64,000 nucleotides of DNA from Styela clava. Taxonomy: Eukaryota. The notes under the pieces are model-generated. The model had not been told where the DNA came from. It saw only the letters and a list, made by a program, of their open reading frames with translations, and did not search any database. How positions within the stretch are numbered: the stretch's first letter is position 1; every line of letters begins with the position of its first letter. Below, piece after piece: positions 13,791 to 64,000 of the stretch. The stretch spans positions 12,214,001-12,278,000 of the forward strand of contig NC_135258.1 of the NCBI RefSeq assembly GCF_964204865.1. Reading direction: 5' to 3'. The position numbers and the translations under genes are program-made.

Positions 13791-13861
13791 TCAGCATGAA
13801 GCTACACAAAAACAGAACCGACGATTTATTACAGTCCTGATTTTGTCCAACTGATTGCTGA
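13791..13861 (-). ncRNA. pre-miRNA-like hairpin, divergent family A (5p CAGUUGGACAAAAUCAGGACUG)
   Basis: Minus strand UCAGCA...AGUUGGACAAAAUCAGGACUG-loop-CGGUUCUGUUUUUGUGUAGCU...UGCUGA. Several pairs form only as G-U on the minus strand. Confidence 0.75.
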
Positions 13862-14221
13862 CAAACAAAAATTATGAAATGTATCGAAACTTCAAAATAT
13901 ATTTCTCCTTTGATATTGAACTATTAAACTACAATACATTTTTCAAAGTTTAAAAATGGCCCGATATTCGATACGTCATTTTCGTCAATAGTTCGAACCA
14001 TCGAAAACGTCTGTTTTAGAGTATTTGAAATCAAATTTTTCCTGCGTTCGGGGATCGTTCGTTCCAACACCAAAAACCTTTTATCCAGCATAATTATTAC
14101 TACAGTATATCAACAAGGCAGTTTATAGTGTAAACGCTGAAAAGCTTGTTCCGCCTTACGAACACACCAAAGTGACTCTTTGGAACACACCTACCACCAG
14201 CAATTATAAAGGGGTATTCGC

Positions 14222-14307
14222 CGAAAGAGAAAACTGATGAACAAAAACAGGACTGACTCTTTCCTTTGTTTCACAGTCTCATTTTGGTTCAACTAATTCC
14301 TCTTACG
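14222..14307 (-). ncRNA. pre-miRNA-like hairpin, A/B intermediate (5p UAGUUGAACCAAAAUGAGACUG)
   Basis: The 5p arm pairs with CAGUCCUGUUUUUGUUCA, with basal stem AGAGGAAUU/AGUUUUCUCU. Confidence 0.7.
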
Positions 14308-15631
14308 CAATCAAAAAGTACTTGTTCGTGAACACAGCGTAGGGTTTCTACCAAGTCATGACCAAGAAATATTTTGATAAGGCCTAGAACGCATTTATGA
14401 ATTACGAATCTCGTGTTCTAAACGAGCGCCGCGCACTCGTTACTTCAAACCAGAGAGGATAATTTCATCTACCCAGGCCATGTTTTTCTGGTCAGGTATT
14501 TTTTTTAAATGAAATCATTCTAAAATCTCAATAACTATTTGCAGGAAGAAACATCACGCGCACCACAAACAGATTACCATTGCAAAATCCACTGCGCTTA
14601 AGCTTGAAATAAATTCCGGAACGACATGTACAAAGGTAGCCCGTTTACAACTGGTTATGACATCAGGGCTATCAAACGCTGGCAAAAATAGTAATGTACG
14701 GGCCAGTTACGGTAGTTAGATTGGTCCTCAATGTGATGTAGAACAGAGAATCAATTCCCTAAACCCGTCGAATTGTGTCCGATTTGAAAGTAATGGTCGG
14801 AATTTGGAAATTTATTAATGAATCTATAATCAATGCTCAATTATTCTCTCCATCGAATCTTATACCAACTTGTCAGCTGCTCGTAGATTTCACAGCATGA
14901 TAACATCGTCAATCAGCTAATTAAAATCGGCATGACGATTTATCATCGTCCTAATTTGTCAAACTTATTAAAAGTATTTTTGTCAAAATTATGAAATTAA
15001 TCTTTGCAAACGTTCACACATCAAGTTAATTATTTATAGACGGCACATAAATGATTTTTTTTGTGTTTGTCGATAATCCTTTACCTTGCAAAGCGTTCTC
15101 TTTCAATATGACAACAAGTGCTCTATTTTTCTGAAATCGCATAACTGAGATTTATAACCTACCAAGTCTTTTTGCCAACAGAAATATTAATAGATAAATT
15201 ACCTGAAATCCCATAGCTATGATGTTATCAGTAACAACAGTACTGCGACTTCTAGTCGCAGGTTACAGCAAATATCGCACAAAATAAAGCGAACATTCAT
15301 TCATTCGAACACATGTACACAATTTCGTGTTCTAACATGGTGAACAATAAATCATGACTGCGTAGCATTGATTTTCCAACTCTAAAATAGTGAATTACAC
15401 TTCAACAATAATATAAAGTTATTATAGAATATATCACAACGGCATTGGTGCCATTCGTTTGTAAAAAGTTTACCTGACGCGTTAAAAATGTTTACATTTT
15501 AGATACATTTCGCCAATGCAATGCATAAAAATAAAAAGGTTGTTTGAGCTTTAATTGTGGCGTCAGAATTCACAATCTGTTTGATATGAAAAAACAATAT
15601 CTGAATTTATTCTATTCTCCGAAGGTTAGTT

Positions 15632-15712
15632 TGACAAAACAAATAGTCGGCCTCAAACGCGGCTGAACAAAAGTCCAACAGCCCTGTTGGAGTCCAACTG
15701 AGTGTGGTGTCA
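15632..15712 (-). ncRNA. pre-miRNA-like hairpin, family A (5p CAGUUGGACUCCAACAGGGCUG); near-identical copy at 17207-17287
   Basis: The 5p arm pairs with CAGCCGCGUUUGAGGCCGACUA. Arms are identical between the two duplicated copies while the loop and flanks differ. Confidence 0.75.
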
Positions 15713-16241
15713 TTTGTAAAATGTAAACATGATACATTGCTTACAGATATTTCAAAATAACATCGGGAAAGTGGTTAAAAATTTAAAGATGAAGAAGCAT
15801 CAATTCGTTCTGTTCGCAAATTGAACCCAAGTTATTATGCGCCTTTTAACATATAATATGTTATCTATAGACTTGTGTCTAACACGTGCGTTTTGCATGG
15901 TTCCACACAATTTTAAATTTAGGTTAACAGCAGTCACACCTATTCTATGACCGGGGCAATCCCAGAGTAGCAATGACTGAAAGACAAAGATGGCGAACAA
16001 AAACAAGGCTGTGGTATTTCAATTTTTAACAACTTTGTTTTTGTTCAACTACTTGCTCTGTTCGCAATAAATTATTCAGTATATAAAAAATCATAATGAC
16101 CGTATACGTGTTGAACACATACATAAATGTGAAATGATTATCGAATGTCTGATTAAAGTGTTATGTGATTGGTGACAAAGTCTTCCGTAGTATTATAATA
16201 ATGTATCAGAAGTATCAGAGATGGCTACTTTATAATTATTG

Positions 16242-16483
16242 TTCAACTATTTATGTTGAACTGCGTATGTCTGAGGAAGTCTGACCCTTGTCAGACGAAA
16301 CGTTACAGAAATATATTTGCGTTAGTGTGCAGCAAGACTATTGAATCCCTCAGAATACGTATCTTCACTCTTGCCACAGCATCCTTACATTATATGCATA
16401 CGGATCCACCGGCGCAAAAGAATAGAAGACGGAAAATTAGTTAGTATCCTAGAAATCCTATCGATCGCACAATTTAACTATTG
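16242..16483 (+). mobile_element. About 240-bp insertion resembling a Penelope-like pLTR or retrozyme fragment
   Basis: Absent from the paralogous site near 17795 (TAATTATTG-TAGTTGAAATA). Flanked by TAATTATTG / TAACTATTG. Contains a hammerhead core. Confidence 0.65.
16268..16307 (+). ncRNA. Minimal type I hammerhead ribozyme
   Basis: UGU-CUGAGGA-A-GUCUGAC(CCUU)GUCAGAC-GAAA-CG-UU-ACA: CUGANGA and GAAA core boxes, perfect 7-bp stem II, palindromic AACGUU in place of stem III, and short stem I UGU/ACA. Confidence 0.7.
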
Positions 16484-17555
16484 TAGTTGAAATAATTTTT
16501 GTTCATCCCATAGGCTAATCAGACAAAATAAGTGGTGTTGGAATTCGTTAGATTTAGGATTTCCTTTTTATAAATAAAGCCGTAAACATTTATCGTGAAA
16601 ATATCAACGCGTGATCAATGATCATGGCAGTAGTTTTATTCATTGGAATTGAACATGGCGATGAAGTTATTATTTACTCTACTAAGAGTTTTATTTCAAT
16701 TGGCTAACAACTGTTATTTTTTCTAAAATTGTGGGGTTAAAAAGTTATATCTTGCTACGTCTTTTTGCTAACAGAAATCTATATATTTGAACTGAAATCT
16801 CACAAGTATGATGTTGTGAGTACCAACAATACCCCGTCTTTTACTCGCAGCCAATATTGCACGCAAAATATAGCGGACACTTATTTATGTACCCAATTGT
16901 TATGTTCTACCACGAGGAATATTAAATTAAGACTCCGTTGCCTAGCCCTAATTTTCCAACTCTAAAATGGTGTTTTCCAACGCAACATTAATATAATGTC
17001 ACTAGAGAATATATCACGAGGGCATTGGTGCCATTCGCAATGTAAAAAGTTTACCTAATGCTTTAAAAATGTTTACTGTTTAAAATACATTTTGCAAATG
17101 CAATGCATAAAAATGGAAAGGTTGTTTAGCTACAATTGTGGCAATTCCCAAACTGTTTCGGTATAAAAAATAAAAAAAATGTGCTTTTATTCCCCGAGGG
17201 TTAGTTTGACACAACAAATAGTCGGCCTCAAACGCGGCTGAACGAAAGTCAAACAGCCCTGTTGGAGTCCAACTGAGTGTGATGTCATTTGCAAAAAGGA
17301 AATTATGATACATTGCTCATAAAAATTTCAAAATAACATCAGGAAAGTGGTTAAAATTTAAAATAAGCATCAATTCGTTCCGTTCGCAACTTAAACCCAA
17401 GTTAATATGCGTCTTTTGACATAATAACTAATATGCTATTTATACACTTGTGTCTACCACGTACGTTTTTCATGGCTCCACACAATGTGAATTTACGTTA
17501 ACATAAGTCACACCTATTCTATGACCGGGGCAACCCCAGAGAAGCAGTGACTGAA

Positions 17556-17633
17556 AGAGCAAGATGATGAACAAAAATAAGGCTGTAGTGATTCAATTTT
17601 TAACAAACTTGTTTTTGTTCAACTACTTGCTCT
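17556..17633 (-). ncRNA. pre-miRNA-like hairpin, B-type seed (5p UAGUUGAACAAAAACAAGUUUG); paralog at 15982-16059
   Basis: Perfect basal stem AGAGCAAG/CUUGCUCU and upper stem UGAACAAAAA/UUUUUGUUCA. Confidence 0.7.
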
Positions 17634-19749
17634 GACGCAATGATTTATTCAGCATATAAAAAATCGTAAACATACATGCTGAACACATATATGCATGTGA
17701 AATGACTATCGGATGTCTGATCAAAATGTTATGAGATTGGTGACAAAGGCTCTTGTAGTATTATAATAATATGTAGAGTATCCGAAAAAGTTACTTTAAT
17801 TATTGTAGTTGAAATATTTTTTATTTATTCCGAAGATTAATCAGACAAAATAAGTGGTGTTGGGATTCGTCAGATTTAGGTTTAAGAGCTAATTTTTAAG
17901 AGCTAATAAGCTGTAGGTTAAAATTAAGCAATTATGGTGTTAAAAGATATAAAATTTCATTTGTCGTGAAAATATCGGCACGTGCTCATGACAGTAGTTT
18001 TATTCATTGGAATTGAACATGGCGATGAAGTTATTATTTATCAATTCATCGTCGATGATCAACTCAAACGAAACGAAACTAGTTAAACAAACCGTACATT
18101 ATATTGCATACTAACAATGAAAGAGTACACCATTGATTCTCGCTTCATAACTCATAATGATGAAGAATTTGGCATTGAGTGATTCACTTTCGATCTTTAA
18201 CTCAAATAAAGTTTATATTCACATATTAATTAGACAATATTTGCGAGTGCTGTAGTGAAAAATGAGGTAGCAAAATTGTTTTTAAATTTTGTTTCTTCAC
18301 AACATTGGCAACACCTAACCCTAATCCGTATTTGCCCTGGTACATCTACTACGGGAGTACCCCAAAACATCCTGCTGGTATGCAAAATGGATCCAGTCAT
18401 TCAGTATAAGAATGTCTTCCTGGTCGAGAAATTTATTGAAGGACACTTTTTAGTCTTTGTTAAAACGATTTTTAAATTTAAACTATGAATAACTGAAACC
18501 AGCAAATACCACCTTAAGTGAAAGTTGCTGCAAAAATTACTTGTAATTAAAGAACTTCGCTTATTACGAGGATTTCCTTCTCTTGCATACATTGCATCCG
18601 ATATTGTTGAGCCATTGTTTCTAATGCCTTTAATTTAGAATTTGGATCATAGCGACGAATAGATGTAAATGGGCCTAATCAGAATAAAATAGTCTATTGG
18701 TGGAATCGTACGTGGAATAATTTTGAATATCGCTCGCTATGTACTGCGCAATGACGAAATTAATTTTTACTTCATTCAGGAAGGCCAATAGAGTTGTTTA
18801 TATACCTCAAAGAAGAAGATTTGCCTATTACCAACAGAAGAAGAAATGAACAATAAGGTCCGTTAACTCGAACAGTACTTGTCGCAACGTAACTTTGTTT
18901 GCGGCGCTTGAAATAGGAAATATAATTTTTTATCAGTAAGAGAAAGCCTTTTCATGCCCAAACGCAAAATGAAATTGATACTAAACTTTCCTTTTATCAG
19001 TATTCGGAAACTTGGGCTAGACTAAAAACGAGGCAATTAAAGACAAATAACTGACATATTGTTAATCTGTCGCAAATCGTAGGACTCAACTTGAACTAAT
19101 CAAGTAAAGTTACCACTTTACGCATATCGCATTTTGTTACAAAATGATGTATCCGAAATATGGCAAGGCTTATACTTTTCAAACGTTAAAAATAAAAAAA
19201 ATTATAATAATTGCAAAATCAGTATCTACCAGGACGCAGCGAGCAATTCATATAGCCCAAAATTTTCCACTGTGGTCTATTTGAGCTGGCAACATTTCTG
19301 GGGATATTCTGTTGCAGCCAAAGAACAAGTCATATGTGTAGTGTATACCATAATCCATATTAAAAACTATCACTATTGAAATGCTATAGTAACATACCTT
19401 CTACCTTGTCCTCCATACCACATCAAACGTCTTTTATATTCTGGAATCCCGACTGGGTCTTTGTCGTCGCTCTTTGCCGATCTAACGCTAAGTAAATTTC
19501 TTGCTGGACGATATCAGCAGTCAGCCAACAAACACATAAAGTGCAAAATATTTCCCTGATCATTGCGAGTTGATTGTATTGTCTCTCGCCCGCCGAGATC
19601 AGAAAATGCTTCTCCTTTTCCGATCTCCCGCAGCCGTCGACCCGTCATTTTAAATCAAAGATGCCGTCAGAAGCAATCGAGAACAAAGAAGGGAGTCGCG
19701 GATCATCAAACACTTAGCGACACAAGCTGATTGAATACTACCCTATTGC

Positions 19750-20290
19750 TGTATAGGCAAAGAGACAACGCCTTATCGAATGTTTTTAACAAAATTTGAA
19801 TGTGCACTTGGAAGAATTAGATGTCAGATTTGTAGTTGTACCAATTCACACAAACACGAATTACACGATGTGTGTGTATTGCAGACACAACGTGTCAGCA
19901 TTTTTCAATGTCGCAACAGCGTGCAAGCGCCCTGTCCGCCACTGCTCGATTCAATTAAAATGGCATTCAGCTACACTCTATCAGGTTGGATGTAAGCAGT
20001 CATTTGTCGACGGACAGTGTACTCTTGAGGAGAAAAATTTTTTGTTGGAAGTTTTGTTGGAAAATTCAATAGCTATAGATTCTCTGCCACCGAATTGCTT
20101 GTTTTCGTCATCTACAAGCCAATGCTTTTAGTCTATCTTGAAACAAATGCTTAGGTACAACCTTTCCTTTTGTATGTCTGAGATTAAATAATATTTGTAT
20201 GATTGATGAGCACAAGCGCTTGGAAATCAGCGGTTAGTCAAGTAAGCGATATCGTCGGATTCATTTGAAGTTGCGCCAACCACTCCGTTT
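19750..20290 (-). pseudogene. Possible highly decayed hAT-type transposase remnant
   Basis: Broken minus-strand frames read ESDDIAY, WLVDDENKQ and GRLHAVATLKNADTLCLQYTH, weakly recalling hAT DESTD, RWVD and GVA...YTHC motifs in the right order. Many stops and frameshifts. Confidence 0.25.
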
Positions 20291-21704
20291 AAATGTTGAT
20301 TTTATGACATTTTGCTGGAATATTAAAATTTGCTGATTTCATTTTATTCAAGGAGTGTGTTGTACGTCAGCTACCGTTATCTCAGCTCAAATACTGACTG
20401 TCCAGTTAATCCTTTTCAAAAATGGAAAATAAATAAAATTCGAAGAAATTTGATTTTAAGGTTGATTATTCAAGCCCATATCCTGGCATGTGCCAAGGCC
20501 ATGATTATTGGAAAACTGGCAATTTTATGATTGATCCATAGTTGTTGAAATGATAGAACTATCTATATTAGTCATTCAATCGGTGCAGTTTGCTGAAATG
20601 ATGTGCTTAAAAGCTCGAAAGAAAATTTATTTATCATTTACTACATTGTAACGTAATGCGCGATCTCGCGATAAACAGTGCTACGAATTTGACTGATATC
20701 GATACAAGATGTCAACATAATTTGAACGACAATTTACAAAGCGACGTTTTCTGTCTTTGTGACATGGTTGGCATTTTTCGTTACAGTTTTATACTTCATG
20801 GAATGCGTCGCTGGGTATATTTGCCGCGAACTCGAGAAGCCAAAAAATTTGAAATTAAATATCCTGGCAAAATACCTGCATTTGTATTTGTGGAAATGTT
20901 TTTTTTATATCAACTCTGAAACAAAATTCTCTTCTACTTCTATCACTCAAGTTTAATCGATACCAATAAATTATATGTCATGGCACTGGTATTGTTTTTG
21001 AGGAGTTGAGAAGGCGATGATGTAAAATCTAAAAAATTTAAAACTAAAAAGGGGGCTCAGTGTCATGTTTTGAACCGGATGCCGTTTGAGATTAAACATG
21101 ATTTACTGGGTGGATAGCGTTGACTCGACAATTAGTCACAATTTGAACACAGTCATGATGGAATCCAACCCATTGAGAAATTACATTTTCTAAAATTACG
21201 ACAGGCGAGTTATTGCGACATACTGAGTTCCACGAATGACCGTTGGAACCGGTGGAATGAATGAATCAAAAATATATCATTAAATTAGTGGTTTGCAGTT
21301 GTTCTTGGAATAACACAAAATCATATATAAAATTATCGATTATAGAAGCCGATGGTAAAATATTTTTTTCAATACCAATGCTTTCTGAAATAGTCAGATT
21401 AATAGACAAGAAGAAACTTTCCAGTTGTTATGATTTAAGTGTCCTCCCTAAATAAGGTAACCATAAAATAGCTATGATACAATTTGATTATGAACTCGTC
21501 TGCCTTGTTTACAATTATACCCCAATCCCAATACTATTTTCAATAACAATAAGATTATGTTCATTTTGTTAAAAAAAAAAACAGGAAGTAAAATTGACTC
21601 ATTATCGACTGTTGTGTTTCGGCGAAAATTCGCCAGTCAGTCGAATCGAGAATTCCAAACTGTGAAACAAACTACGCAACAATAATAATCAATTGGTGAT
21701 AATT

Positions 21705-21788
21705 TGATTCAACAAGTAGTCGAATACTCACGTGGCTGAACGAATGTTAATGACAGCCCTGTTCGAATCCAACTAAACGATAAATCAC
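21705..21788 (-). ncRNA. pre-miRNA-like hairpin, family A (5p UAGUUGGAUUCGAACAGGGCUG)
   Basis: Basal stem UGAUUU/GAAUCA, UG at -14/-13, and downstream CACC. Confidence 0.7.
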
Positions 21789-22950
21789 AAGTTCAAGGAG
21801 CCATCGATATTTTACTATTGTCAAATGTACGACTTCCAAACTTCAAATCAGGAGAACTAAATTGAACATGAAATGAATTTTAGTACAAGTTCGTTTATCG
21901 CAGCACAATGCTTGGAAATACTATGTCATGGTTTTCCAAATGCGACAGACGATATCAAATATACCGGTAGTTAGATTACTGATTTTGTATGTTTTTGTTT
22001 ATAACATTAAATGAAAACTAATGATAGACAAGTTGGAATCCCACATTGTTGTACTGCGCAGTCATAGGTTTGTTGCTACACAAATCTGAGAAAAATCTGT
22101 GAGATTGCTGCTACTGATATTTTAGTTATGTTTTATGGGATGTTAGGTTTTTACTCGTTTGTGTTTTCTTGATAAAGTTGATATGTTTCACAATTGCGAA
22201 TATTTAGCTTCAACACTCATAACATGAGCCACAAAGAGATAGTATAATTTTAGTTCGAACATCTTTTTTGCGAAAGTAAATTATATGATTTACTAACATT
22301 ATTAGCAGATTGGACCATTATTATTTTGTTTACTCGAGAAAGAGGGAAATTAACCTAATTGATGTAATATTGAAACAGCATAAGAGACATGAAAATCATT
22401 TTCACAAAAATATTTTTATATTATATAACATTAATTAATATAAGAAAAAGATCTTTATCCTAGCGACAACGGAAATACTCAAATTTACAATAAAAGTACA
22501 ATCATGATTTATTTGACGGAAGAAAATGATTTCCATTGAATGGATTGAACATTAATAAATAAGATATTAAATTCAATTTTAATGTTCAAATCATGCAATA
22601 AAAAATAGTATAAAATTGTGGTGCGTTTTCGATCATCATAAAATTACACGTGAGAAAATTATTATTTTTTTGTCCCTGGTCTAATCGATGTAATGCGTAA
22701 TCATATCTTCAATATAGCATTTATATCGTCAAGCATTGATTATACTAAAAATGAATATAAAAACTATATAAATGGAACTTTGTTCAATCTTTTGCACTGT
22801 TGTAAGAACCCAAATACTCTAGCTAGTGTATAGTTTATCATATTGAGGCAAAATGATGCAATACCTACAATTTGATTGAATTCTATTGCGGTATGAGATG
22901 AGCAAATTTTCCTATTTTCGATTGGTTTCCAAAAAGAAAGAAGGAAATAA

Positions 22951-23025
22951 TTTTCATTGACTAAATTGAACATGAAATGAATATTAGGTAAAATTCAATT
23001 TCAATGTTCAACTCAACCAATAAAA
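22951..23025 (-). ncRNA. pre-miRNA-like hairpin, family B (5p GAGUUGAACAUUGAAAUUGAA)
   Basis: Stem of about 32 bp: UUUUAUUG..UGAGUUGAACAUUGAAAUUGAAU / AUUCAUUUCAUGUUCAAUUUAG.CAAUGAAAA. Confidence 0.75.
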
Positions 23026-23794
23026 CTTATGAATATACCAGGAATGTTCTTGTCAACATGCAACCAATATTAAATACTTTCATACATTTTCAGTCCAATA
23101 TTTATAGCGGATTATATAGTGGTTCTTGAAGTTCGACATTTCTGGTAACGTTAGATAGCAGGTTTGCTATGCTTCAGTGTTGATAGTGTTGGTTCGGCAA
23201 ATAGTTAGAAATTAACAGGTCTGTATAAAAACTGCTAACACCCCTGTTCAAATCCAACTGATTAGAGAACCACATAATTGGCACTGAACCACGCCGCCGT
23301 AAGTTGGATATGTTTTTTAGTTGGCGCAACTAATAGTCAGTGTTTCACGAGACCAATATCTTTCCATGCTATGTTCCGATGCGCAATGGTCCGTATTCGT
23401 ATAACGCAAGGGTGCTGAAGCAAAAATACGCAAATCTGCAAATTTACTGCTACAACTTTCGTGGTTATTGGTATCTAAGAAAACCTTTTGAATGAGGACT
23501 AAAAATTATTGTTTCACAGCTTGTATTTTGTATAATGCGAGGGGCACATAAAAAACTTTGCTTTAACGACCATGAGCTAAAATGGTGAAATTATAGGTAC
23601 GTTGTCATTTATGCAAAAATGAAACATGCTATTCATTATAAATTCCATTTGGTTCATTTAGGAAATAGGTAAATAGCTTTTATAAATTGCATGATGTGAA
23701 TTAAAGCTTAATTGTAGTTATCAATGTGTTAAACTCCGACAATAAAAATGTCCCAATTCTCAAGCCAGAAGTGAAAGTACTAGATTGAAATGTA

Positions 23795-23892
23795 CCGTGT
23801 TTCCCCGAATATAAAACCTACCCTGAAAATAAGACATAGCCTCAGTTTTGAAATGATTTTAATGTAAGCCCTCCTCTCAAAACAAGACCTAT
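23795..23892 (+). mobile_element. Left-end fragment of a Tc1/mariner-superfamily (Tc2/pogo-like) MITE
   Basis: TA followed by CCGTGTTTCCCCGAATATAAAACCTA with repeated AAATAAGAC-like subterminal motifs. Replaced by other sequence in the paralog near 27225. Confidence 0.45.
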
Positions 23893-23996
23893 AGCCGATA
23901 GACCTATAGTCGATAGCGAGAAATCTCTCGTACACGTTCCGAATGATAAATAATCTATGTTTTGGTAATTTGGTAAATTGTGTATTCGATAAACTG

Positions 23997-24183
23997 GGTT
24001 CCATTACATTTGAACCCACGTGCATTTGAACCCACGACGATTGCACCGGCATACTATTGCACCTATGGAAATTTTTGTTGTTTTATGGATATTTGAACCC
24101 ATACTAACCCTAACCCATGGGTTTAGCACCCGCATATAGATTGAACCCGCGAATATACACATGGGTTCAAATGTACGGTCACC
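23997..24183. mobile_element. Mutator-like MITE
   Basis: 22-bp TIRs (GGTTCCATTACATTTGAACCCA / TGGGTTCAAATGTACGGTCACC) and a perfect 9-bp TSD GATAAACTG. The empty site is present in the paralog near 27500. Confidence 0.9.
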
Positions 24184-52506: not shown

Positions 52507-55500
52507 AAGTTCTAGGGATATAACCTATTGATGATTTTTCAAATTAATACAGAATAATGAAATGCAAACTATTTTTTGACTATTTTTGCTGTTTAATCTT
52601 ATCAAATGTATCGAATCCATTTTGGCTTCTTCAAATCAGAAGAAAATAATTTTCATTAAGTAAATTGAACATGGAATGAATTAGAAGTAAAATTCAATTA
52701 CAAGGTTCAACTCAAGCAATAAAACTTATGAAGGATTCCAGATTCATAAAAACATGCATCTGCATCTGAATTTAAACATCAGCGCCAGGTGACCTATCAG
52801 CGTAATAACTTTCTTGGTGCCCTATGTTTATTGATATTAAATTTTTTCAGCTTAATTAGATCAATTCGAATACTAAATATACAACAAGTATATGAAACAG
52901 ACATAAACAAAACAATAAATTAGTTGTCTCAATTGGAAATAAGTTGGAAAAATATTTCACTATTGCAACAAATTGTATAGATTTACCCAAATTCCAACGT
53001 AAGAGAATAGTGCAAATTCTGTCTCACCTTCGACATTTTCAAGATGCATGTTATAAAACATCCTCATGTCACAGTTTGAAAGTTGTATAACACCAAATCG
53101 ACTGCGTCAAATTAAATGAAGAATAGTTAGAGACTTAGAGTTAAACTCATTGACAAATAAAAACTTACCGCATGGTTATTCAAATATAGATTTAAAAGAA
53201 ATTTCTTATGGCATATATAGTCGACTACCCTCTCTCTCCCATTGATATAACTACTACCCTCTCCTATTTTTCGTCGATGATAATGTTGATTCAACAAATA
53301 GTTTGATCAAACATGGCTGCATAACATTTAACGACAGCCCTGTTAAAATCCAACTAAACGATAAATCACGTTCTAGAAGCTATGATCAATTTTTGCGGAA
53401 TAATGAAATAAAAACAATTTATTTAAAGAAAATACCGCGAATATTCCATTGCTGTATATTATTAGAAATATTGTTGAGTCTCAATTGGTTTCTTCAAATC
53501 AGATGAAATAAATTTTCATTACTAAATTGAACGTGAAATGAATAATAAATAATATTCAATTTCAATGTTCAACTCGGACATAAAAATTATTGTGTTGATT
53601 CCCAGGGTCATGTTGACAGGTATAATACCAACATTGTAAACTTTCATTTAGGTCTCCAGCACAAAAACATTTGAAAAAAAAAATTGAAGTTTGTTGTTAT
53701 ATATTCCATATAATGTAATTAACATTGTATACCAAGCAAGCTGCGTAAGAATATCTTTCAAATTAACCACAAGTGTGAAAATACGACCCGATTTTAGTTT
53801 GATCACATGGCACAGGTGATAACATAGATTCAACAATTCGCTAGATGCAAACGTGGCCAAATAAATTGACAACAGCCCTGTTTAAATCCAACTGATGGTA
53901 AAACTATTTTCTTGAAAAGCACTAAAGTAGCGATTCCAGTCTCCAGGCTATCGGTTTAAAATCGATTATGCATTTAAGTATATTGAAACTAAAATTTTGG
54001 AAATACGGCATCAATATTACCGATGCCCGATTACATTCAACAAATATACCGTCAAGACTGGGAAATCTATGACGCTTCGGTCATGCTCACAAAACCGAAT
54101 CGAAGACTGATAAAACAGTCTTGGAAACCTATCACTATGTTTCATTTATTAAATATAAATTAACTTAAATAGCAGGCTACATGATAAATGATAAACTAGT
54201 TGAAGATAAACGTGAACACAGAATACAAGAATATGATGTTTGTCAGAAAATGAAACAAGAAAGAGATTATCTGCTTTTCGAAAAGCCATCGCGAACAATA
54301 TCGAAAAACTCCTCTTTTATCTCGTATCGATAATATTTACCTAATAAAGATATGATAGTTAACACCGGTAACGTGCCGGGAATTATTTTGAGTTCTGGCA
54401 GATAACGTGCATATAGTTTACAAAATATGGTAAAGCTGTTATCAGCGACAATTGACTATGAATTCATTTAAAATAAACGTACCGTAGTTCAACCTTTGAC
54501 GAAAGATGTTCCAAGCAATCCTCATCTATTATCAGACGAATTGTACACTCTCTCGCCTTCTTTGCTTAAAACTTTTTAACCGCATTTTCAATTAACAGGT
54601 AAAACCTGACGCACGAAAGCTTTAAAACTACTCGTCTAATGGGCTCGCAAAAGTTTGAACTATACGATCTGAAAACATTTCTTCAGAAAGAAATTTCTTA
54701 CGTTGTACATCACTCTCTGAATGTAAGAAGAAACTCACTCCGATTTCTCTCGCTGACCTCATGCTGATCCAACGACAAGTTGGCGCCGAAAGCTTCAATA
54801 TTTTTCTCTTTAATTTAACCGTGTTGCGTTCATCAGCTGAACATCTTGTTAGTTTTCAATTGCGAAATGACTCTTCTTCACTTATGGGTTAAGAATGTGA
54901 TTTTTCGTGTTTTATTGAAGTCCCGCCCCCATGTGCAAGCATTTTGGACACTGTTAACCACTACAACGCCCATGACTATAGCTCGATTCCGCGTCTGCAG
55001 TTATCGTGATTTTAAACGATAACGGGTTAATCTGGCTGCAGCTGGAGAAATTTCGATTTTAAAGGCATTCGGTAAAAGGGCTGCTTCCTAGTTACCTTAA
55101 CCCCATCTAGCTATTTCCATGTTTTAACCCGTTCTTTACAATACTTAAAGTTCAAGACCAGCATTCTTCGTTTGAATTGCAATTCAGAAATCATTTCGAC
55201 TAGATCTTTACGAACTACATCTGATGCTAAAAGTATTGTATTTTGTCAACGACGTTTGGCGCATCAAGCTCAGTGGTACTGGTAAATTATAGAACTACAA
55301 CATTGTAGGTTTTCAGTGGCAAAATGACAAAGGCAATGTCAAAGTGTTGACAATCTGATTCAACAAATGGCCAGAAACTTGCAGAACTGTACGAATATTA
55401 TTAACAGTCCTGTTCGAATCTAACTAATCGATAGATCACAAGTTCTAGGGATATAACCTGTTGATGATTTATCATATAAATACAGAATAATAAAATGCTA

Positions 55501-58500
55501 ACTAATTTTCAACTATTTTTGCTGTTTAATCTTATCAAATGTGTCGAATCCAGATTGGCTTCTTCCAATCAGAAGAAAATAATTTTCGTTGAGTAAATTG
55601 AACATGGAATGAATTAGAAGTAAAATTCAATTACAAGGTTCAACTCAAGCAATAAAACTTATGAAGGATTCCAGATTCATAAAAACATGCATCTAAAGAT
55701 GCAATTCTGCCTTTCCTAAACCTCAAAAAAGAAAGTACTTGCTGGTTTCAATTTTATCACTCGCCAATGGTGATTACATAGATTCAGGAATTAGTTTAAT
55801 GCAAACATGGCCAAATAAATTTAAACATCAGCGCCAGGTGACCTATCAGCGTAATAACTTTCTTGGTGCCTTATGTTATTGATATTAAATTTTGACAGCT
55901 TAATTAGATCAACTCGAATACTAACTATGAAACAGACATAAACAAAACATTCAACAAAAAAATAAATTAGTTTTCTCAATTGGAAATAAGTTGGAAAAAT
56001 ATTTCACTATTGCAACAAATTGTATAGATCTAAGTTCCAACGTAAGAGAATAGTGCAAATTCTGTCTCACCTTCAACATTTCTTACAAGATGCATGTTAT
56101 AAAACATCCTTATGTCACACAAGATAGGTTTCAGTACTTCCGGCACTCTCTGCGTATTAGTGAATTTCACATTCCTGTAGAAACATATACATTGTCATGA
56201 ACAACACTATTTAACCGAGTTGCTGTAGGTAACGCCACCCAGAGTCGGTATACACTCAGAAAACCAAACTTTCGCGAACATAATTCGATTATAGGATTAG
56301 AAAACAAAATGGCGATGCCACAAATATATCGACGAGACCATTCATCTGTCCACATCGAGCACCGCAGAATTCATCAGGAGAGAAAAAGATGTTAGTTTTC
56401 AACAAGCAGATAGAACAACATTTTCATCTAGTGATTTATAATTGATGTTACCGTTACTTTGAAAGTTGTACAACACCGAATTGACTGCGTCAAATTCAAT
56501 GCAGAACACTCAGAATCGTTAGAGTTAAACTTATTATCAAATAAAAACTTACCGTATGCTATTCAAATCTAGATTTGAGAGAAATTTCGTTTTGTCATAT
56601 ATAGTCGACTACCCTCTCTCTCCCATTGCTATAAATGAAACCCTGTCAAACTAAAAACTCAATTTTTCCATTTTTCATCAATGATAATGTTAATTCAACA
56701 AATAGTTTGATCAAACATGGCTGCATAACATTTAACGACAACTAAACGATAAATCACGTTGTAGAAGCTAGGATCAATTTTTGCAGAATTATGAAATAAA
56801 AACAATTGATTTAAAGGAAATACCGCGAATATTCTATTGCTGTATATTATTAGAAAAATTGTTGACTCTCAATTGGTTTCTTCAAATCAGATGAAAATAA
56901 TTTTCATTGACTAAATTGAACATGATATGAATAATAAATAATATTCAATTTCAATGTTCAACTCAAACATAACAATTATTGTGTTGAGTCCCAGAGCCAT
57001 GTTAACACGTATAATACCAACATTGCAAACTTTCATTTAGGTCTCCAGCACAATAACATTTAAAAAAAAATTGAGTTTTGTTGTTATATATTCCATATAA
57101 TGTAATTAACATTGTATAACAAGCAAGCTGCGTAAGAATATCTTTCTTAACCACAGGTGTGAAAACACCTCCCGATTTTAGTTTGATCACACGGCACAGT
57201 TGATAACATAGATTCAACAATTCGCTAGATGTAACCATGACCAAATAAATTGACAACAGCCCTGTTTGAATCCAACTGATGGTAAAACTATTCTCTTGAA
57301 AAGTACTAAAGTAGCGGATCGGAAAGATTCAATTACTCCAGTCTCCAGACTATCGGTATAAAATTGAATATGCATTCAAGTATATTGGAACTAAAATTTT
57401 GGAAATACGGCACCACTATTAGCGATGCACGATCACATACCGGTACAACAAATATATCGTCAAGACTGGGAAATCTATAAGGCTTCGGTCATGCTCACAA
57501 AACCGAATCGGAGAATAATAAAACAGTCTTGGAAACCTATCACTATGTTTCATTTATCAAATATAAATTAACTTAGATGCCAAAAACAGTCTACATGATA
57601 AATAATAAACTAGTTGTAGATAAACGTGAACCCAGAATACAAAAATATGATGTTTGTCAGAAAATGAAACAAGTGCAGATTATCTGCATTTCAAAAAGCT
57701 ATCGCAAACAACATCGAAAAACTATTATTTTATCTCGTATTGATGATATTTAACTGATAAAGATATGATAGTTAACACCGGTAATGTGCCGGGAATTATT
57801 TGAAATTGATATAGATAACGTGTATATATATATAGTTTACAAAGTACGGTAAAGCTGTTATCAGCGGCAATTGACTATGAATTCATTTGAAATAAACGTA
57901 CCGTAGTTCAACCTATGACGAAAAATGTTCCAAGCAATCCTCATCTATTATCATACTATTTGTACACTCTCTTGCCACCTTTGCCCGAAACTTTTTAACA
58001 GCATTTTCAATTAACAGGTAAAACCTGACGAACGAAAGCTTCAAAACTACACGTCTAACAGGCTCGCGAAAATTTGAACTATACGTTCTGAAAACATTTA
58101 TTAGAAATGAAATTTCTTACGTTGTACATCACTCTCTGAATGTAACAAAAAACTCACTCCGATTTCGCTCGCTGACCTCATGCTGATCCAACGACAAGTT
58201 GGCGCCGAAAGCTTCAATATTTTTCTCTGCGAATTAACCGTGTTGCGTTCATTAGCTAAACATCTTGTTAGTTTTCAATTGCGAAATAACTCTTCTTTAC
58301 TAAAGGGTTAAGAATGTGATTTTTCGGTTTTATTGAAGTCCCGCCCCCAGGTGCAAGCATTTTGGACACCGTTAACCACGACAACGCCCATGACTGTAAC
58401 ACGATACAGTGTTTTCAGCCATAGTGATTTGAAATAGAAACGGGTTAATCTGACTGCAGCTGCAACAATTTCGATTTTGAAAGCACTCAGAAAAAGTCTG

Positions 58501-61500
58501 CTATCGTGGTACCCTAACCCCATCTCCCTGTTCCCATGTTTCAAACCGTTCTTTACAAAACTTAAAGTTCAAGGCCAGCATTCTTCGTTTGAATTGCAAT
58601 TCAGAAACCATTTCGTCTAGATCTTCACGAACTACATCTCATGCTAAAAGTATTGTATTTTGTCAATGACGTTTGGCGCATCAAGCTCAGTGGTACTGGT
58701 AAATTATTGAACTACAACATTGTAGGTTTTCAGTGACAAAATGACAAAAGCAATGTCGTGTTGACAATCTGATTCAACGAATGGCCAGAAACTTGCAGAA
58801 CTGAACGACTATTATTAAAAATGCATTAAATAAATAACTATTTTGTGACTATTTTTGCTGTTTAATCTTATTAAATGTATCTATCCAAATTGGCTTCTTC
58901 AAATCAGAAGAAAATAATTTTTATTGAGTAAATTGAACATGGAATGAATTAGAAGTAAAATTCAATTACAAGGTTCAACTCAAGCAATAAAACTTATGAA
59001 GGATTCCAGATTCATGAAAACATGCATCTGAAGATGCAATTCTGCCATTCCTAAACCTCAAAAAAGAAAGTACTTGCTGGTTTCAATTTTATCACTGGGC
59101 AATGGTGATAATATATATTCAGGAATTAGTTTAATGCAAACATGACCAAATAAATTTAAACATCAGCGCCAGGTGACCTATCAGCGTAATAACTTTCTTG
59201 GTGCCTTATGTTATTGATATTAAATTTTGACAGCTTAATTAGATTAATTCGAATACTAAATATACAACAAGTATATGAAACAGACATAAACAAAACATTC
59301 AACAAAAAAACGAGAATATCGGTCGGAGACCGAAGACTTATCGATCGAAACTGCGGTTTCGACCCTTGACTCTATAGTGACACCGCGTGTCCCATAACTA
59401 ATTAATTAATATTTATACGACATAGTTCATCCAAAATCAATAGGCTTCTGGTCCAAGATATGATGAATGCACATGCAAAATTTGGAGCAGATTCAACCAC
59501 ACCTTCGAGATATCGCGTGCATCTAACAGACAGACAGACAAACAGACAAATACCTATCAACATACTTACCGATCTAAAGATCGATAAGTAATAAATTAGT
59601 TTTCTCAATTGGAAATAAGTTGGAAAAATATTTCACTATTGCAAAAAATTGTATAGATTTATCCAAGTTCCAACGTAAGAGAATAGTGCAAATTCTGTCT
59701 CACCTTCGACAATTCTTACAAGATGCATGTTATAAAACATCCTTATGTCACACAAGATAGATTTCAGTACTTCCGGCAATCTCGGCGTATTAGTGAATTT
59801 CACATTCATGTAAAAACAAATACATTCTCATGAACAACACTATTTAATCAAGTTGCTGTAGGTAACGCCAATCAGAGTCGGTATACACTCAGAAAACTAA
59901 ACTTTCGCTAACAGAATTCAATTGTAGCATTAGAAAACAAAATGGCGATGCCACAAATATATCGACGAGACGCATTCGTCTGTCTACATCGAGCACCGCA
60001 GAATTCATCAGGAGAGAAAAAGATGTTAGTTTTCAACAAACAGATAGAACAACCTTTTCATCTAGTGATATATAATTGATGTTACCGTTACTTTGAAAGT
60101 TGTACAACACCGAATCGACTGCGTCAAATTCAATGCAGAACACTCAGAATCGTTAGAGTTAAACTTATTATCAAATAAAAACTCACCGTATGCTATTCAA
60201 ATCTAGATTTAAAGGAAATTTCGTTTTGTCATATATAGTCGACTACCCTCTCTCTCCCATTGATATAAATGAAACCTTGTCAAACTAAAAACTCAACTTT
60301 TCCATTTTTCGTCGATGATAATGTTGATTCAACAAATAGTTTGATCAAACATGGCTGCATAACATTTAACGACAGCCCTGTAAAAATCCAACTAAACGAT
60401 AAATCACGTTGTAGAAGCTATGATCAATTTTTGCTGAATAATGAAATAAAAACAATTTATTTAAAGAAAATACCGCGAATATTCTATTGCTGTATATTAT
60501 TAGAAAAATTGTTGACTCTCAATTGGTTTCTTCAAATCAGATGAAAATAATTTTCATTGACTAAATTGAACATGATATGAATAATAAATAATATTCAATT
60601 TCAATGTCTAACTCAAACATAAAAATTATTGTGTTGAGTCCCAGGGCCATGTTAACACGTATAATACCAACATTGCAAACTTTCATTTAGGTCTCCAGCA
60701 CAATAACATCGAAGAAAAAAAGGGGTTTTGGTGTTTTATATTCCATATAATGTAATTAACATTGTATAACAAGCAAGCTGCGTAAGAATATCTTTCTTAA
60801 CCACAGGTGTGAAAACACCTCCCGATTTTAGTTTGATCACACGGCACAGGTGATAACATAGATTCAACAATTCGCTAGATGTAGACATGACCAAATAAAA
60901 TGACAACAGCCCTGTTTGAATTCAACTGGTGGTAAAACTATTCTCTTGAAAAGCACTCTAAAGTAGCGAATCGGAAAGATTCAATTACTCCAGTCTCCAG
61001 ACTATCGGTATAAAATCGAATATGCATTCAAGTAAATTGGAACTAAAATTTTGGAAATACGGCACCACTATTAGCGATGCACGATCACATTCAACGAATA
61101 TATCGTCAAGACTGGGAAATCTATAAGGCTTCGGTCATGCTCACTAAACCGAATCGGAGAATAATGAAACAGTCTTGGAAACCTATCACTATGTTTCATT
61201 TATCAAATATAAATTAACTTGGATGCCAAAAACAGGCTACATGATAAATAATAAACTAGTTGTAGATAAACGTGAACACAGAATACAAAAATATGATGTT
61301 TGTCAGAAAATGAAACAAGTGCAGATTATCTGAATTTCAAAAAGCTATCGCAGACAACATCGACAAATTCTTCTTTTATCTCGTATTGATAATATTTAAC
61401 TGATAAAGATATGATAGTTAACACCGGTAATGTGCGCGGAATTATTTGAAATTGATGTAGATAACGTGTATATATATATATATATATATATAGTTTACAA

Positions 61501-62655
61501 AATACGGTAAAGCTGTTATCAGCGTCAATTGACTATGATTTCATTTAGAATAAACGTACCGTAGTTCAACCTTTGACGAAAAATGTTCCAGGCAATCCTT
61601 ATATATTATCATACGATTTGTAAACTCTCCCGCCTCCTTTGCCCGAAACTTTTCAACAGCATTTTCAATTAACAGGTAAAACCCGACGAACGAAAGCTTT
61701 AAAACTACACGTCTAACAGGCACGCAAAAATTTGAACTATACGTTCTGAAAACATTTCTTAAAATGAAATTTCTTACGTTGTACATCACTCTCTAAATGT
61801 AAGAAAAAAATTCACTCCGATTTCTCTCGCTGACCTCATGCTGATCCAACGACAAGTTGGCGCCGAAAGCTTCAATATTTTTCTCTGCGAATTAACCGTG
61901 TTGCGTTCATTACCTAAACATCTTGTTAGTTTTCAATTGCGAAATGACTCTTCTTTACTTATGGGTTCAGAATGTGATTTTTCGTGTTTTATTGAAGTCC
62001 CGCCCCCAGGTGCAAGCATTTTGGACACCGTTAACCACGACAACGCTCATGACTGTAACACGATACAGTGTCTCCAGCCACAGTGATTTGAAATAGAAAC
62101 GGGTTAATCTGGCTGCAGCTGCAACAATTTCGATTTTGAAATCACTCAGAAAAAGGCTGCTACCGTGGTACCCTAACCCCATCTAGCTATTTCCATGTTT
62201 TAACCCATTTTTTACAATACTTAAAGTTCAAGGCCAGCATTCTTCGTTTGAATTGCAATTCAGAAATCATTTCGACTAGATCTTTATGAACTACATCTGA
62301 AGCTAAAAGTATTGTATTTTGTCAACGACGTTTGGCGCATCAAGCTAAGTGATACTGGTAAATTATAGAACTACAACCTTGAAGATTTTCAGTGGCAAAA
62401 TGACAAAAGCAATGTCGTGTTGACAATCTGATTCAACAAATGGCCAGAAAGTTGCAGAACTGAACGAATATTATTAACAGTCCTGTTCGAATCCAACTAA
62501 TCGATAGATCACAAGTTCTAGGGATATAACCCTATTGATGATTTTTCATATTAATACAGAATAATAAAATGCAAACTATTTTTTGACTATTTTGCTGTTT
62601 AATCTTATCAAATGTATCGAATCCAGATTGGCTTCTTCAAATCAGAAGAAAATAA

Positions 62656-62731
62656 TTTTCATCAAGTAAATTGAACATGGAATGAATTAGAAGTAAAATT
62701 CAATTACAAGGTTCAACTCAAGCAATAAAAC
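62656..62731 (-). ncRNA. pre-miRNA-like hairpin, family B array subtype 2 (5p GAGUUGAACCUUGUAAUUGAA); copies 42680, 45967, 47116, 50765, 52650, 55583, 58918
   Basis: The 5p arm pairs with UUCAUUCCAUGUUCAAUUU, with downstream CUUC. Confidence 0.68.
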
Positions 62732-64000
62732 TTATGAAGGATTCTAGATTCATAAAAACATGCATTCTGCTTTTCCTAAACCTAAAAAAAGAAAGTACTT
62801 GCTGGTTTCAATTTTATCACTCGGCAATGGTGATAACATAGATTCAAGAATTAGTTTAATGCAAACATGGCCAAATAAATTTAAACATCAGCGCCAGGTG
62901 ACCTATCAGCGTAATAACTTTCTTGGTGCCTTATGTTATTGATATTAAATTTTGACAGCTTAATTAGATCAATTCGAATACTAAATATACAACAAGTTCA
63001 TGAAACAGACATAAACAAAACATTCAACAAAAATATAAATTAGTTTTCTCAATGGGAAATAAGTTGGAAAAATATTTCACTATTGCAACAAATTGTTTAG
63101 ATTTACCCAAGTTCCAACGTAAGAGAATAGTGCAAATTCTGTCTCACCTTCGACATTTCTTATAAGATGCAAGTTATAAAACATCCTCATGTCACACAAG
63201 ATAGATTTCAGTACTTCCGGCACTCTCTGCGTCCAAGTATTGGTGAATTTCACATTTCTGTAGAAACAAATACATTCGCATGAACAACACGATTTAACCA
63301 AGTTGCTGTAGGTAACGCCAACCAGAGTCGGTATACACTCAGAAAACTAAACTTTCGCGAACAGAATTCGATTGTTCGATTGTAGCATTAGAAAACAAAA
63401 TGGCGATGCCACAAATATATCCAAGAGACGCATTCGTCCGTCTACATCGAGCACCGCAGAATTCATCAGGAGAAAAAAAGATGTTAGTTTTCAAAAAACA
63501 GATAGAACAACCTTCTCATATAGTGATATATATTAGGTGTTACTGTTACGACATAATTCATCCAAAATCAATAGGCTTCTGGTACGAGATATGATGACTG
63601 CTCATGCAAAATTTGGAGCAGATTTCGAGATATCGCGTGCATCTAACAGACAGACAGACAAACAGACAAATACCTATCAACATACTTACCGATCTAAAGA
63701 TCGATAAGTAATAAATTAGTTTTCTCGATTGGAAATAAGTTGGAAAATATTTCACTATTGCAACAAATTGTATAGATTTATACAAGTTCCAACGAAAGAG
63801 AATAGTGCAAATTCTGTCTCACCTTCGGCATTTTCTACAAGATGCATGTTATAAAACATTCTCATGTCACACAAAATAGATTTCAGTACTTCCGGCACTC
63901 TCTGCGTATTAGTGAATTTTACATTCCTGTAGAAACAAATACATTCTCATGAACAACACTATTTAACCAAGTTGCTGTAGGTCACGCCAACCAGAGTCGG

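What the first reader, a model, noticed from the sequence alone, without database searches (positions are those of the whole stretch)
13791..64000. Lineage-specific miRNA mega-cluster: about 65 co-oriented hairpins of two seed-related families over 50 kb
Seen: two 70-85 nt stem-loops recur every few hundred bp, always on the minus strand, and stay recognisable even where the surrounding DNA has lost alignability (13.8-36 kb). One arm of about 22 nt is conserved (A: NAGUUGGAUUCRAACAGGGCUG; B: GAGUUGAACAUUGAAAUUGAA) while the partner arm and loop vary. Pairs that would be A-C mismatches on the plus strand are G-U on the minus strand. Known: this pattern is typical of pre-miRNAs, and massively tandem seed-sharing clusters such as zebrafish miR-430 and Xenopus miR-427 give high dosage for maternal mRNA clearance. 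Inference: this is an analogous high-dosage cluster with seeds AGUUGGA/AGUUGAA, which I do not recognise as a conserved bilaterian family.
Basis: partly seen in the sequence, partly recalled or inferred. Interest (0 to 1): 0.95.

Follow-up and report, generated by a model that had tools for sequence, protein, structure and literature searches.

The report
Large tandem microRNA cluster, sea squirt
About 55 kb of the sea squirt Styela clava genome carries roughly sixty same-strand copies of two related microRNA-type hairpins that show the sequence marks of real microRNA genes; this is a bigger, so far undescribed example of the tandem microRNA clusters already known from the sea squirt Ciona, and its expression and function are untested.

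Summary
Covariance models find 31 family-A and 26 family-B hairpins in the window, all on the minus strand. Five more lie just past its end, so the cluster runs from 12.28 kb to 67.1 kb in window coordinates. There are also 2 bridge copies and about 12 broken remnants. In the 377-Mb genome both families occur only at this locus.

The sequence strongly supports canonical microRNA genes:
- Stems are about 35 bp and fold far better than shuffles (z -2.7 to -7.6).
- The minus-strand RNA is the more stable strand in 57 of 60 copies, because of G-U pairs.
- Family A's 5' arm has the classic profile: nt 1 free, nt 2-8 invariant, nt 9-12 relaxed.
- A CNNC motif sits 16-18 nt past the inferred Drosha cut in 20 of 22 diverged lineages (background 2.7% per position).
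- Family A has an invariant apical UGU, and the duplex ends favour the 5' arm.
- Hairpins are three times less diverse than their flanks.

No small-RNA data were available, so processing, timing and the proposed miR-430-like role in maternal mRNA clearance remain untested.

The kind is known: Ciona has a 25-hairpin cluster, and its mir-2202 family and csa-miR-n30 share the UGAGUUG/UAGUUGAAC 5' end. An earlier follow-up in this scan described another microRNA array elsewhere in this genome. Verdict: a new member of a known kind, of moderate interest.

The parts
12282..64000 (-). Whole cluster as far as the window reaches; it continues to about 67100 (L001 1-3100)
   Evidence: cmsearch with models R1 and R2: 31 A and 26 B hairpins here, 5 more beyond the window, all on the minus strand. 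The full coordinate list is in notebook entry 3.
12282..36000 (-). Older, diverged part: 13 A, 10 B and 2 bridge hairpins in DNA that mostly no longer aligns
   Evidence: Few long self-BLAST alignments, yet hairpins score 33-95 bits. Native arm pairs beat chimeras, which indicates compensatory evolution.
37000..64000 (-). Young higher-order tandem array: 18 A and 16 B hairpins in mosaic units of about 3.4-4.8 kb. Transcript order is A-a, B1, A-t, spacer, B2, A-c, spacer.
   Evidence: 78 direct and no inverted self-alignments at 75-99% identity.
43777..43869 (-). Representative A-t hairpin
   Evidence: 99.8 bits; MFE -24.8, z -3.2; CNNC at +18.
43833..43854 (-). Predicted 22-nt 5p guide of that hairpin, UAGUUGGAUUUUAACAGGGCUG. 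The register is inferred and could be off by 1 nt.
   Evidence: Conservation profile, position of CNNC, duplex-end asymmetry.
40987..41074 (-). Representative A-a hairpin
   Evidence: 84.4 bits; MFE -25.5, z -3.3.
40508..40601 (-). Representative A-c hairpin
   Evidence: 88.4 bits; MFE -27.2, z -3.5. A low-depth contig of run X6 covers 40330-40593.
44002..44090 (-). Representative B1 hairpin
   Evidence: 84.3 bits; MFE -24.1, z -5.8.
50756..50844 (-). Representative B2 hairpin (CCUUGUAAUUG variant)
   Evidence: 95.9 bits; z -5.6; CNNC at +17.
21697..21790 (-). Old family-A copy whose 5' arm matches the consensus exactly
   Evidence: 0 mismatches; 95.3 bits; z -2.7.
17199..17290 (-). Diverged A copy (GGACUCC variant) with co-varying 3' arm
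   Evidence: MFE -33, z -4.4; no chimera folds as well as the native pair.
28900..28988 (-). Old family-B copy
   Evidence: 89.2 bits; MFE -30.5, z -7.6.
13779..13868 (-). Distal diverged A copy (CAGUUGGACAAAAUCAGGACUGU)
   Evidence: 56.9 bits; MFE -34 on the minus strand against -16.7 on the plus strand.
12282..12377 (-).
   Evidence: 35.2 bits; MFE -22.6, z -3.4.
14214..14310 (-). Bridge hairpin: its 5' arm starts UAGUUGAAC (B-like) and ends GACUGUG (A-like)
   Evidence: R1 32.8 bits; MFE -24.9, z -2.0. Its first 9 nt equal those of csa-miR-n30.
17549..17653 (-). Second bridge hairpin (UAGUUGAACAAAAAC...)
   Evidence: Single hairpin at -29 kcal/mol, but with no strand asymmetry.
56683..56759 (-). 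Example of a broken remnant: an A-t copy with an internal deletion in the 5' arm
   Evidence: 35 bits; z -0.07. Eleven others are listed in notebook entry 3.
58351..58458 (-). Element C: a conserved 108-nt hairpin followed by a GGGGCGGG box, one per unit in 8 units. It may be a per-unit promoter or a third hairpin family; neither was tested.
   Evidence: MFE -33.5, z -3.8 on the minus strand against z -0.8 on the plus strand; alignment of the 8 copies.

Best explanation
This is a tandemly amplified cluster of canonical microRNA genes in Styela clava.

Inferred steps:
1. One or more long primary transcripts are read from the minus strand. They start between the last hairpin (about 67.1 kb) and the divergently oriented GrpE-like gene (about 70 kb), and possibly also from a GC-box element repeated in each unit.
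2. Each stem-loop of about 35 bp is recognised by the Microprocessor through a basal UG, an apical UGU (family A) and a downstream CNNC.
3. It is cut to a pre-miRNA of about 60 nt, diced, and the 5' arm is loaded into Argonaute.
4. The predicted guides are N-AGUUGGAYUCNAACAGGGCUG (A) and U-GAGUUGAACNUUGNAAUUGAA (B). They would repress mRNAs carrying UCCAACU-type and UCAACUC/UUCAACU-type sites.
5. The high copy number gives high dosage.

Shown here: the structure, the strand bias, the selection pattern, the processing motifs, and the single-locus distribution. The array also shows birth and death by unequal crossing-over, with young copies at the transcript's 5' side, old diverged copies at the 3' side, and many decayed remnants.
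For: - Location and orientation: all 62 model hits are on one strand and at one locus in 377 Mb.
- Folding: z-scores are -2.7 to -7.6.
- Strand bias: the minus-strand RNA is more stable in 57 of 60 copies (Wilcoxon p about 1e-6 and 1e-5) through G-U pairs.
- Pairing: 82.5% and 85.6% of cells are paired, against 26-49% when the partner is slid. Changes on both sides occur at 10 of 27 pairs (A) and 8 of 34 pairs (B).
- Co-evolution of arms: in diverged copies, 0-6% of chimeras fold as well as the native pair.
- Family A 5p profile over 15 lineages: nt 1 at 0.5, nt 2-8 at 0.9-1.0, nt 9-12 at 0.8-0.4, nt 13-18 at 0.8-1.0, and UGU at nt 21-23 at 1.0. The 3' arm is less conserved.
- CNNC at +16 to +18 in 10 of 11 A lineages and 10 of 11 B lineages, with varying inner bases; the background is 0.027 per position.
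- Duplex ends: the 5p end is the weaker one in 25 of 26 A and 15 of 19 B copies.
- Diversity: hairpin 0.078 against flanks 0.256, lower in all ten subtype groups.
- Spacers are locus-specific and non-coding.
- No near-perfect antisense target exists anywhere in the genome.
- Ciona has expressed clusters of the same design, and small RNAs with the same 5' end.
Against: - There is no small-RNA evidence. Only assembled contigs were available. Two low-depth contigs in one run guessed to be RNA cover 40330-40593 and 42941-43220, and they could be DNA carry-over.
- In BLAST-aligned parts of the young array, the arms are barely more conserved than the spacer (0.90-0.93 against 0.90). Selection is therefore clear for old copies and within subtypes, but weak for the newest duplicates.
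- About a quarter of the copies fold poorly (-9 to -19 kcal/mol) and about 12 are broken.
- No Rfam family matches.
- The copies share ancestry, so counts across copies are not independent.
- The consensus structure used for the pair counts was derived from these same sequences.
Confidence: 0.78

Rival explanations
1. It is a hairpin-bearing tandem repeat that is silent, or transcribed but not processed: an evolutionary leftover or satellite whose units happen to fold.
For: No expression was shown. Many copies are decayed. Conservation of the arms barely exceeds that of the spacer in the youngest duplicates.
Against: A neutral repeat would not be expected to show strand-specific G-U pairing, a seed-type conservation profile, CNNC kept at +16 to +18 with changing inner bases across diverged lineages, or compensatory arm changes.
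Confidence: 0.1
2. The hairpins are functional RNA structures of another kind, for example repeated protein-binding stem-loops in a long non-coding RNA, and are not Drosha/Dicer substrates.
For: The structure and one arm are conserved, which any sequence-specific RNA-protein contact could explain.
Against: The stem length, the 22-nt conserved block, CNNC at the canonical distance, the apical UGU and the duplex-end asymmetry all fit microRNA biogenesis specifically. The design also matches the expressed Ciona clusters.
Confidence: 0.07
3. It is a source of endogenous siRNAs or piRNAs, or the termini of a transposon family.
For: It is tandem and repetitive, and one dispersed element of about 165 bp sits in one unit.
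Against: The motifs and models hit only this locus, never in inverted orientation. The spacers are locus-specific. The stems are short, unlike hpRNA. No near-perfect complementary site exists elsewhere in the genome.
Confidence: 0.04

Closest known systems
Ciona intestinalis 25-hairpin and 11-hairpin clusters (mir-2200/2201/2203/2204/2217 of Hendrix et al. 2010, PMC2884542; later called the miR-4000 group)
   Same: Co-oriented tandem hairpins with a dominant 5' arm. The families differ by a single seed base and arose by local duplication. The 5p ends ...GAACAGGCUGU where family A ends ...GAACAGGGCUGU. Model R1 hits the Styela counterparts on contig C13 weakly (18.6 bits).
   Different: The seeds differ (GAAACUU, GGAACUU, GGAACAU against AGUUGGA). 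Ciona packs 25 hairpins into about 4 kb; here there are about 60 in about 55 kb, with kb-sized spacers. Expression is proven there and not here.
Ciona intestinalis mir-2202 family (9 members, Scaffold_83 and Scaffold_1669; PMC2884542, Additional files 2 and 5)
   Same: The 5p starts UGAGUUGG, against UGAGUUGA in family B and AGUUGGA in family A. The copies are tandem and same-strand, mostly 0.6-1.6 kb apart, and the 5' arm is dominant.
   Different: The rest of the guide and the 3' arm do not align. Read counts there are low (9-244). Synteny was not tested. A shared 7-8 nt start could be chance; I estimate about 1 in 100 given the number of Ciona families.
Ciona savignyi csa-miR-n30 / n55 (PMC5831862, Additional file 2)
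   Same: UAGUUGAACUUUAACCGGUAGCGG. Its first 9 nt are identical to the bridge copies at 14214 and 17549, and 15 of 22 nt match the A-t guide, including UUUAAC at the same offset. It comes from sequenced embryonic and larval small RNA.
   Different: The 3' end differs and its locus is unknown. The same list holds tRNA fragments, so its status as a microRNA is not secure. This genome has no copy within 3 mismatches.
Zebrafish miR-430 and Xenopus miR-427 arrays (from my own knowledge, not checked here)
   Same: Tens to hundreds of tandem copies of related hairpins on one strand. Repeat units possibly carry their own promoter (element C with a GC box, untested).
   Different: The seed family is different (AAGUGCU type). 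Expression at genome activation and a role in maternal mRNA clearance are unknown here.

Membership tests
Canonical animal microRNA gene | Imperfect stem of about 35 bp with a terminal loop, folding better than shuffled sequence | tested here: met
   The median span of the 5' strand is 39-40 nt with 27-36 pairs. z is -2.7 to -7.6 in 14 representatives. About a quarter of the copies fold poorly.
Canonical animal microRNA gene | One arm of about 22 nt conserved, with an invariant seed and a freer nt 1 and nt 9-12 | tested here: met
   Family A profile over 15 lineages. In family B both arms are conserved, so the guide arm is less clear.
Canonical animal microRNA gene | Microprocessor motifs: CNNC 16-18 nt past the 3' cut, apical UGU, basal UG | tested here: met
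   CNNC is present in 20 of 22 lineages. UGU is invariant at nt 21-23 of A and absent in B. UG sits at -14 in 9 A copies and at -12 in 19. All positions depend on the inferred register, which could be off by 1 nt.
Canonical animal microRNA gene | Discrete 21-23 nt reads from both arms forming a duplex with 2-nt 3' overhangs | not testable with these tools
   No small-RNA run was offered. Only Logan contigs were laid.
Canonical animal microRNA gene | Conservation of the hairpin in another species | not testable with these tools
There is only literature-level similarity to Ciona small RNAs.
miR-430 / miR-427 type clearance cluster | AAGUGCU-type seed | tested here: not met
   The seeds are AGUUGGA and GAGUUGA/AGUUGAA.
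miR-430 / miR-427 type clearance cluster | Burst of expression at zygotic genome activation, and clearance of maternal mRNAs | not testable with these tools
   No staged RNA data could be laid on the locus.
Ciona mir-2202 family | 5p beginning UGAGUUGG, with the rest of the guide alignable | tested here: inconclusive
   Nt 1-7 are identical to family B, and the AGUUGG core to family A. The remainder is not alignable by eye.
Ascidian mir-2200/2201/2203 (miR-4000) group | Seed GAAACUU, GGAACUU or GGAACAU | tested here: not met
   The seed is different. Only the 3' half GAACAGG(G)CUGU is shared, and R1 hits the Styela C13 array at 18.6 bits (E 0.003 in 3 kb).
Any Rfam 15 RNA family | Score at or above the family's gathering threshold | tested here: not met
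   There were 0 matches over the window. The best sub-threshold match in one unit was mir-2943 at 21 bits against a threshold of 76.

The most novel reading that the evidence does not exclude
The array is a tunicate counterpart of miR-430. Each repeat unit would carry its own GC-box promoter (element C), the units would fire together at zygotic genome activation, and the flood of AGUUGGA/GAGUUGA-seed guides would clear maternal mRNAs. That would be an independent invention of the vertebrate strategy with an unrelated seed.
Probability: 0.1. Interest if true: 0.8.

Novelty: new member of a known kind. Interest (0 to 1): 0.45.

Why it matters
Ascidians are the closest invertebrate relatives of vertebrates, and they are known for fast turnover of microRNA genes.

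This locus shows the whole life cycle of a microRNA family in one place: fresh duplicates, diverged but still folding copies with compensatory changes, bridge forms between two seed types, and dead remnants. That makes it a good natural experiment on how seeds shift and how the Microprocessor motifs (CNNC, UGU) are maintained.

If staged small-RNA data show a burst in early embryos, it would become a test case for convergent use of high-copy microRNA arrays in maternal mRNA clearance.

It also shows that surveys which mask tandem repeats, as the Halocynthia survey did, will miss such clusters.

Tried and rejected
- Rfam at gathering thresholds over the window, and at E-value thresholds over one unit, gave nothing useful.
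- An unbiased RNALfold scan for single hairpins had too high a background to discriminate (106 on the plus strand, 130 on the minus strand). Two earlier sliding-window scripts timed out.
- RNAalifold on the MAFFT alignments recovered only 5 and 14 pairs, because bulges shift the 3' arms. I used a consensus of the individual folds instead.
- Transposon termini or a dispersed repeat are rejected. The motifs, models and spacers are confined to this locus, apart from one inserted element of about 165 bp.
- The metagenome pattern scan gave two contigs, and neither matches the hairpin models, so both are chance hits.
- The supplement of the Halocynthia roretzi microRNA survey has no match, and that survey masked tandem repeats.
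- A text search of papers for the motif strings returned only unrelated primers and satellites.
- RNA runs: only contigs were available, they were nearly empty on the locus, and they cannot show small RNAs.
- Synteny next to the GrpE-like gene in other tunicates could not be tested.
- One call failed on a coordinate slip and was corrected.
- The bacterial promoter/terminator scan is not meaningful for an animal genome.
Full report
WHERE AND WHAT
The window is contig C10, 12,214,001-12,278,000, of a 377-Mb assembly. A GrpE-like exon just past the window is 98% identical to the Styela clava protein UPI00193A5307, so the organism is Styela clava or a very close relative. The cluster lies between CAND1 exons on the plus strand at about 4.4-6.4 kb and GrpE-like exons on the plus strand at about 70.2-71.0 kb in window coordinates. 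It is therefore convergent with CAND1 and divergent from the GrpE-like gene.

CHECK OF THE OBSERVATION
Motif A occurs 30 times and motif B 23 times at up to 3 mismatches. Every match is on the minus strand, and shuffles give 0.00-0.01. Genome-wide, all 27 matches to A at up to 2 mismatches are at this locus. B has 21 matches here plus 7 scattered 2-mismatch hits.

I built covariance models for each family.
- In the window they find 31 A and 26 B hairpins. Four more A and one more B lie in the next 3.1 kb.
- Over the whole genome, every hit is in this locus, with the caveat that only the best 150 candidates were scored.
- The models also find two bridge copies and about twelve broken copies with internal deletions that no longer fold.

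ARCHITECTURE
From 37 kb onward the DNA is a mosaic higher-order tandem array, with 78 direct and no inverted self-alignments at 75-99% identity. In transcript order, a unit holds A-a, B1 and A-t within about 550 nt, then a spacer of about 1.4 kb, then B2 and A-c 220 nt apart, then a spacer of about 1.5 kb. Between 12 and 36 kb the flanks rarely align, yet the hairpins remain.

The spacers are non-coding and specific to this locus. The one exception is a dispersed element of about 165 bp inserted in a single unit at 63548-63710. This rules out transposon termini.

IS IT AN RNA STRUCTURE UNDER SELECTION?
- Fourteen representatives fold with z-scores of -2.7 to -7.6.
- The minus-strand RNA is more stable than the plus-strand RNA in 57 of 60 copies, by about 8 kcal/mol on average. 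It has 4.4 and 3.8 G-U pairs per hairpin against 1.8 and 0.6. This points to a transcript of that strand and not to a DNA palindrome.
- On a consensus structure taken from the individual folds, 82.5% (A) and 85.6% (B) of cells pair, against 26-49% when the partner column is slid. Changes on both sides occur at 10 of 27 and 8 of 34 pairs. That structure came from these same sequences, so these figures lean in its favour.
- An alignment-free test agrees. For the diverged copies, 0-6% of chimeras made with another copy's 3' half fold as well as the native pair. Several young copies fold worse than their chimeras and look decayed.
- Within ten subtype groups, hairpin columns are always less diverse than the flanks (pooled 0.078 against 0.256).
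- One counter-observation: in BLAST-aligned parts of the young array, the arms (0.90-0.93 identity) barely exceed the spacer (0.90). Selection is therefore clear over the longer term, but the newest duplicates may simply be young.

IS IT SPECIFICALLY A MICRORNA PRECURSOR?
Taking one representative for each of 15 diverged A lineages, the 5' arm shows the textbook profile:
- nt 1 is variable (0.5).
- nt 2-8 are 0.9-1.0.
- nt 9-12 are relaxed (0.8 falling to 0.4).
- nt 13-18 are 0.8-1.0.
- UGU at nt 21-23, the apical junction, is invariant.
- The 3' arm is less conserved.

With that register, a CNNC motif begins 16-18 nt past the inferred 3' Drosha cut in 10 of 11 A lineages and 10 of 11 B lineages. 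Its inner bases vary (CTTC, CACC, CAAC, CGGC, CGCC, CAGC, CATC), and the background is 0.027 per position. A basal UG sits at -14 or -12 in A. The 5' end of the 5p strand is the weaker end of the duplex in 25 of 26 A and 15 of 19 B copies, which predicts loading of the conserved arm.

The positions of CNNC, UGU and UG, and the asymmetry rule, are established features of Microprocessor and Argonaute substrates. I cite them from my own knowledge (Auyeung et al. 2013; Fang and Bartel 2015; Schwarz et al. 2003).

No near-perfect complementary site exists elsewhere in the genome. That fits seed-based targeting and argues against siRNA or piRNA action.

WHAT IS MISSING
No small-RNA run was available. 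The runs offered were assembled contigs. One run guessed to be RNA has two low-depth contigs at 40330-40593 and 42941-43220, and the other three have nothing meaningful. Processing, the exact 5' ends, the stage of expression and the targets are therefore all inferred.

The register is uncertain by one base. For B, the invariant G argues for U-GAGUUGA and against G-AGUUGAA. In that case A and B share the AGUUG core in shifted seeds, not a common seed position.

COMPARISON WITH KNOWN FAMILIES
Rfam has no match. The published ascidian literature does have the kind.
- Hendrix et al. 2010 describe a Ciona intestinalis cluster of 25 microRNAs in about 4 kb, from three families that differ by one seed base, and a second cluster of 11. 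Both were taken to be recent tandem duplications.
- Their guides end ...GAACAGGCUGU, where family A ends ...GAACAGGGCUGU. The Styela counterparts of those families sit on contig C13. Model R1 hits them only weakly (18.6 bits), so a distant common origin is possible but not shown.
- The Ciona mir-2202 family is closer in seed. It has nine tandem members, begins UGAGUUGG, and is 5p-dominant.
- A Ciona savignyi small RNA, csa-miR-n30, reads UAGUUGAACUUUAACCGG.... It equals the two bridge copies over its first 9 nt and matches the A-t guide at 15 of 22 positions. It is not a fragment of a conserved housekeeping RNA in this genome.
- I put the chance that A and B belong to an ascidian-wide family with these Ciona RNAs at about 40%.
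- No paper in the library describes Styela small RNAs or this cluster. The Halocynthia survey masked tandem repeats and has no match.

VERDICT
The microRNA-cluster reading is well supported by independent sequence signatures (confidence about 0.78). The maternal-clearance analogy is untested (about 0.1).

The kind of locus is known in ascidians. An earlier follow-up in this scan (s1-813313) reports miR-4000-type arrays in this same genome, including one said to be far larger; I located the C13 arrays myself but did not check the larger one. This is therefore a new, large and well-preserved member of a known kind. Its main interest is as a record of microRNA birth, seed shift and death, and as a candidate for staged expression studies.

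Noticed in passing
window 63548-63710: A dispersed element of about 165 bp (SINE- or MITE-like). It gave more than 1800 first-look candidates on many contigs, in both orientations, at 87-93% identity. It is inserted in only one unit of the array, so it is a recent insertion.
   Followed up: partly
window 40079-40186, 42110-42217, 45397-45504, 50198-50305, 54933-55040, 58351-58458, 62010-62117; also L001 2100-2207: Element C, a well conserved non-A/B block found once per unit. It is a 108-nt hairpin that folds well only on the minus strand (z -3.8 against -0.8), followed by a GC box (CCTGGGGGCGGGAC) and AATAAAA. It could be a per-unit promoter or a third hairpin family.
   Followed up: partly
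window 4466-6376, plus strand: Exons of a CAND1 (cullin-associated NEDD8-dissociated protein) gene, recognised by eye from the ORF translations. The gene is convergent with the cluster.
   Followed up: no
L001 6190-7043 (window 70190-71043), plus strand: The last exons of the mitochondrial GrpE-like gene, 98% identical to the Styela clava protein. Its 5' end lies about 2-3 kb from the first hairpin, so the two may share a divergent promoter region.
   Followed up: partly
G000 contig C13, 12620465-12621982 (minus) and 12626737-12627889 (plus): Back-to-back arrays of hairpins whose 5' arms read GGAACAUAACGGAAAGGGCUG and GAAACUUAUCGUGAAACAGGCCG. These are the Styela counterparts of Ciona mir-2203 and mir-2200.
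   Followed up: partly
window 21113-21186, 24698-24781, 26622-26738, 27983-28066, 56683-56759 and seven sites about 100 nt 5' of B2 copies (e.g. 62832-62924): Dead copies of family A with internal deletions or a lost 3' arm. They no longer fold better than shuffled sequence.
   Followed up: yes
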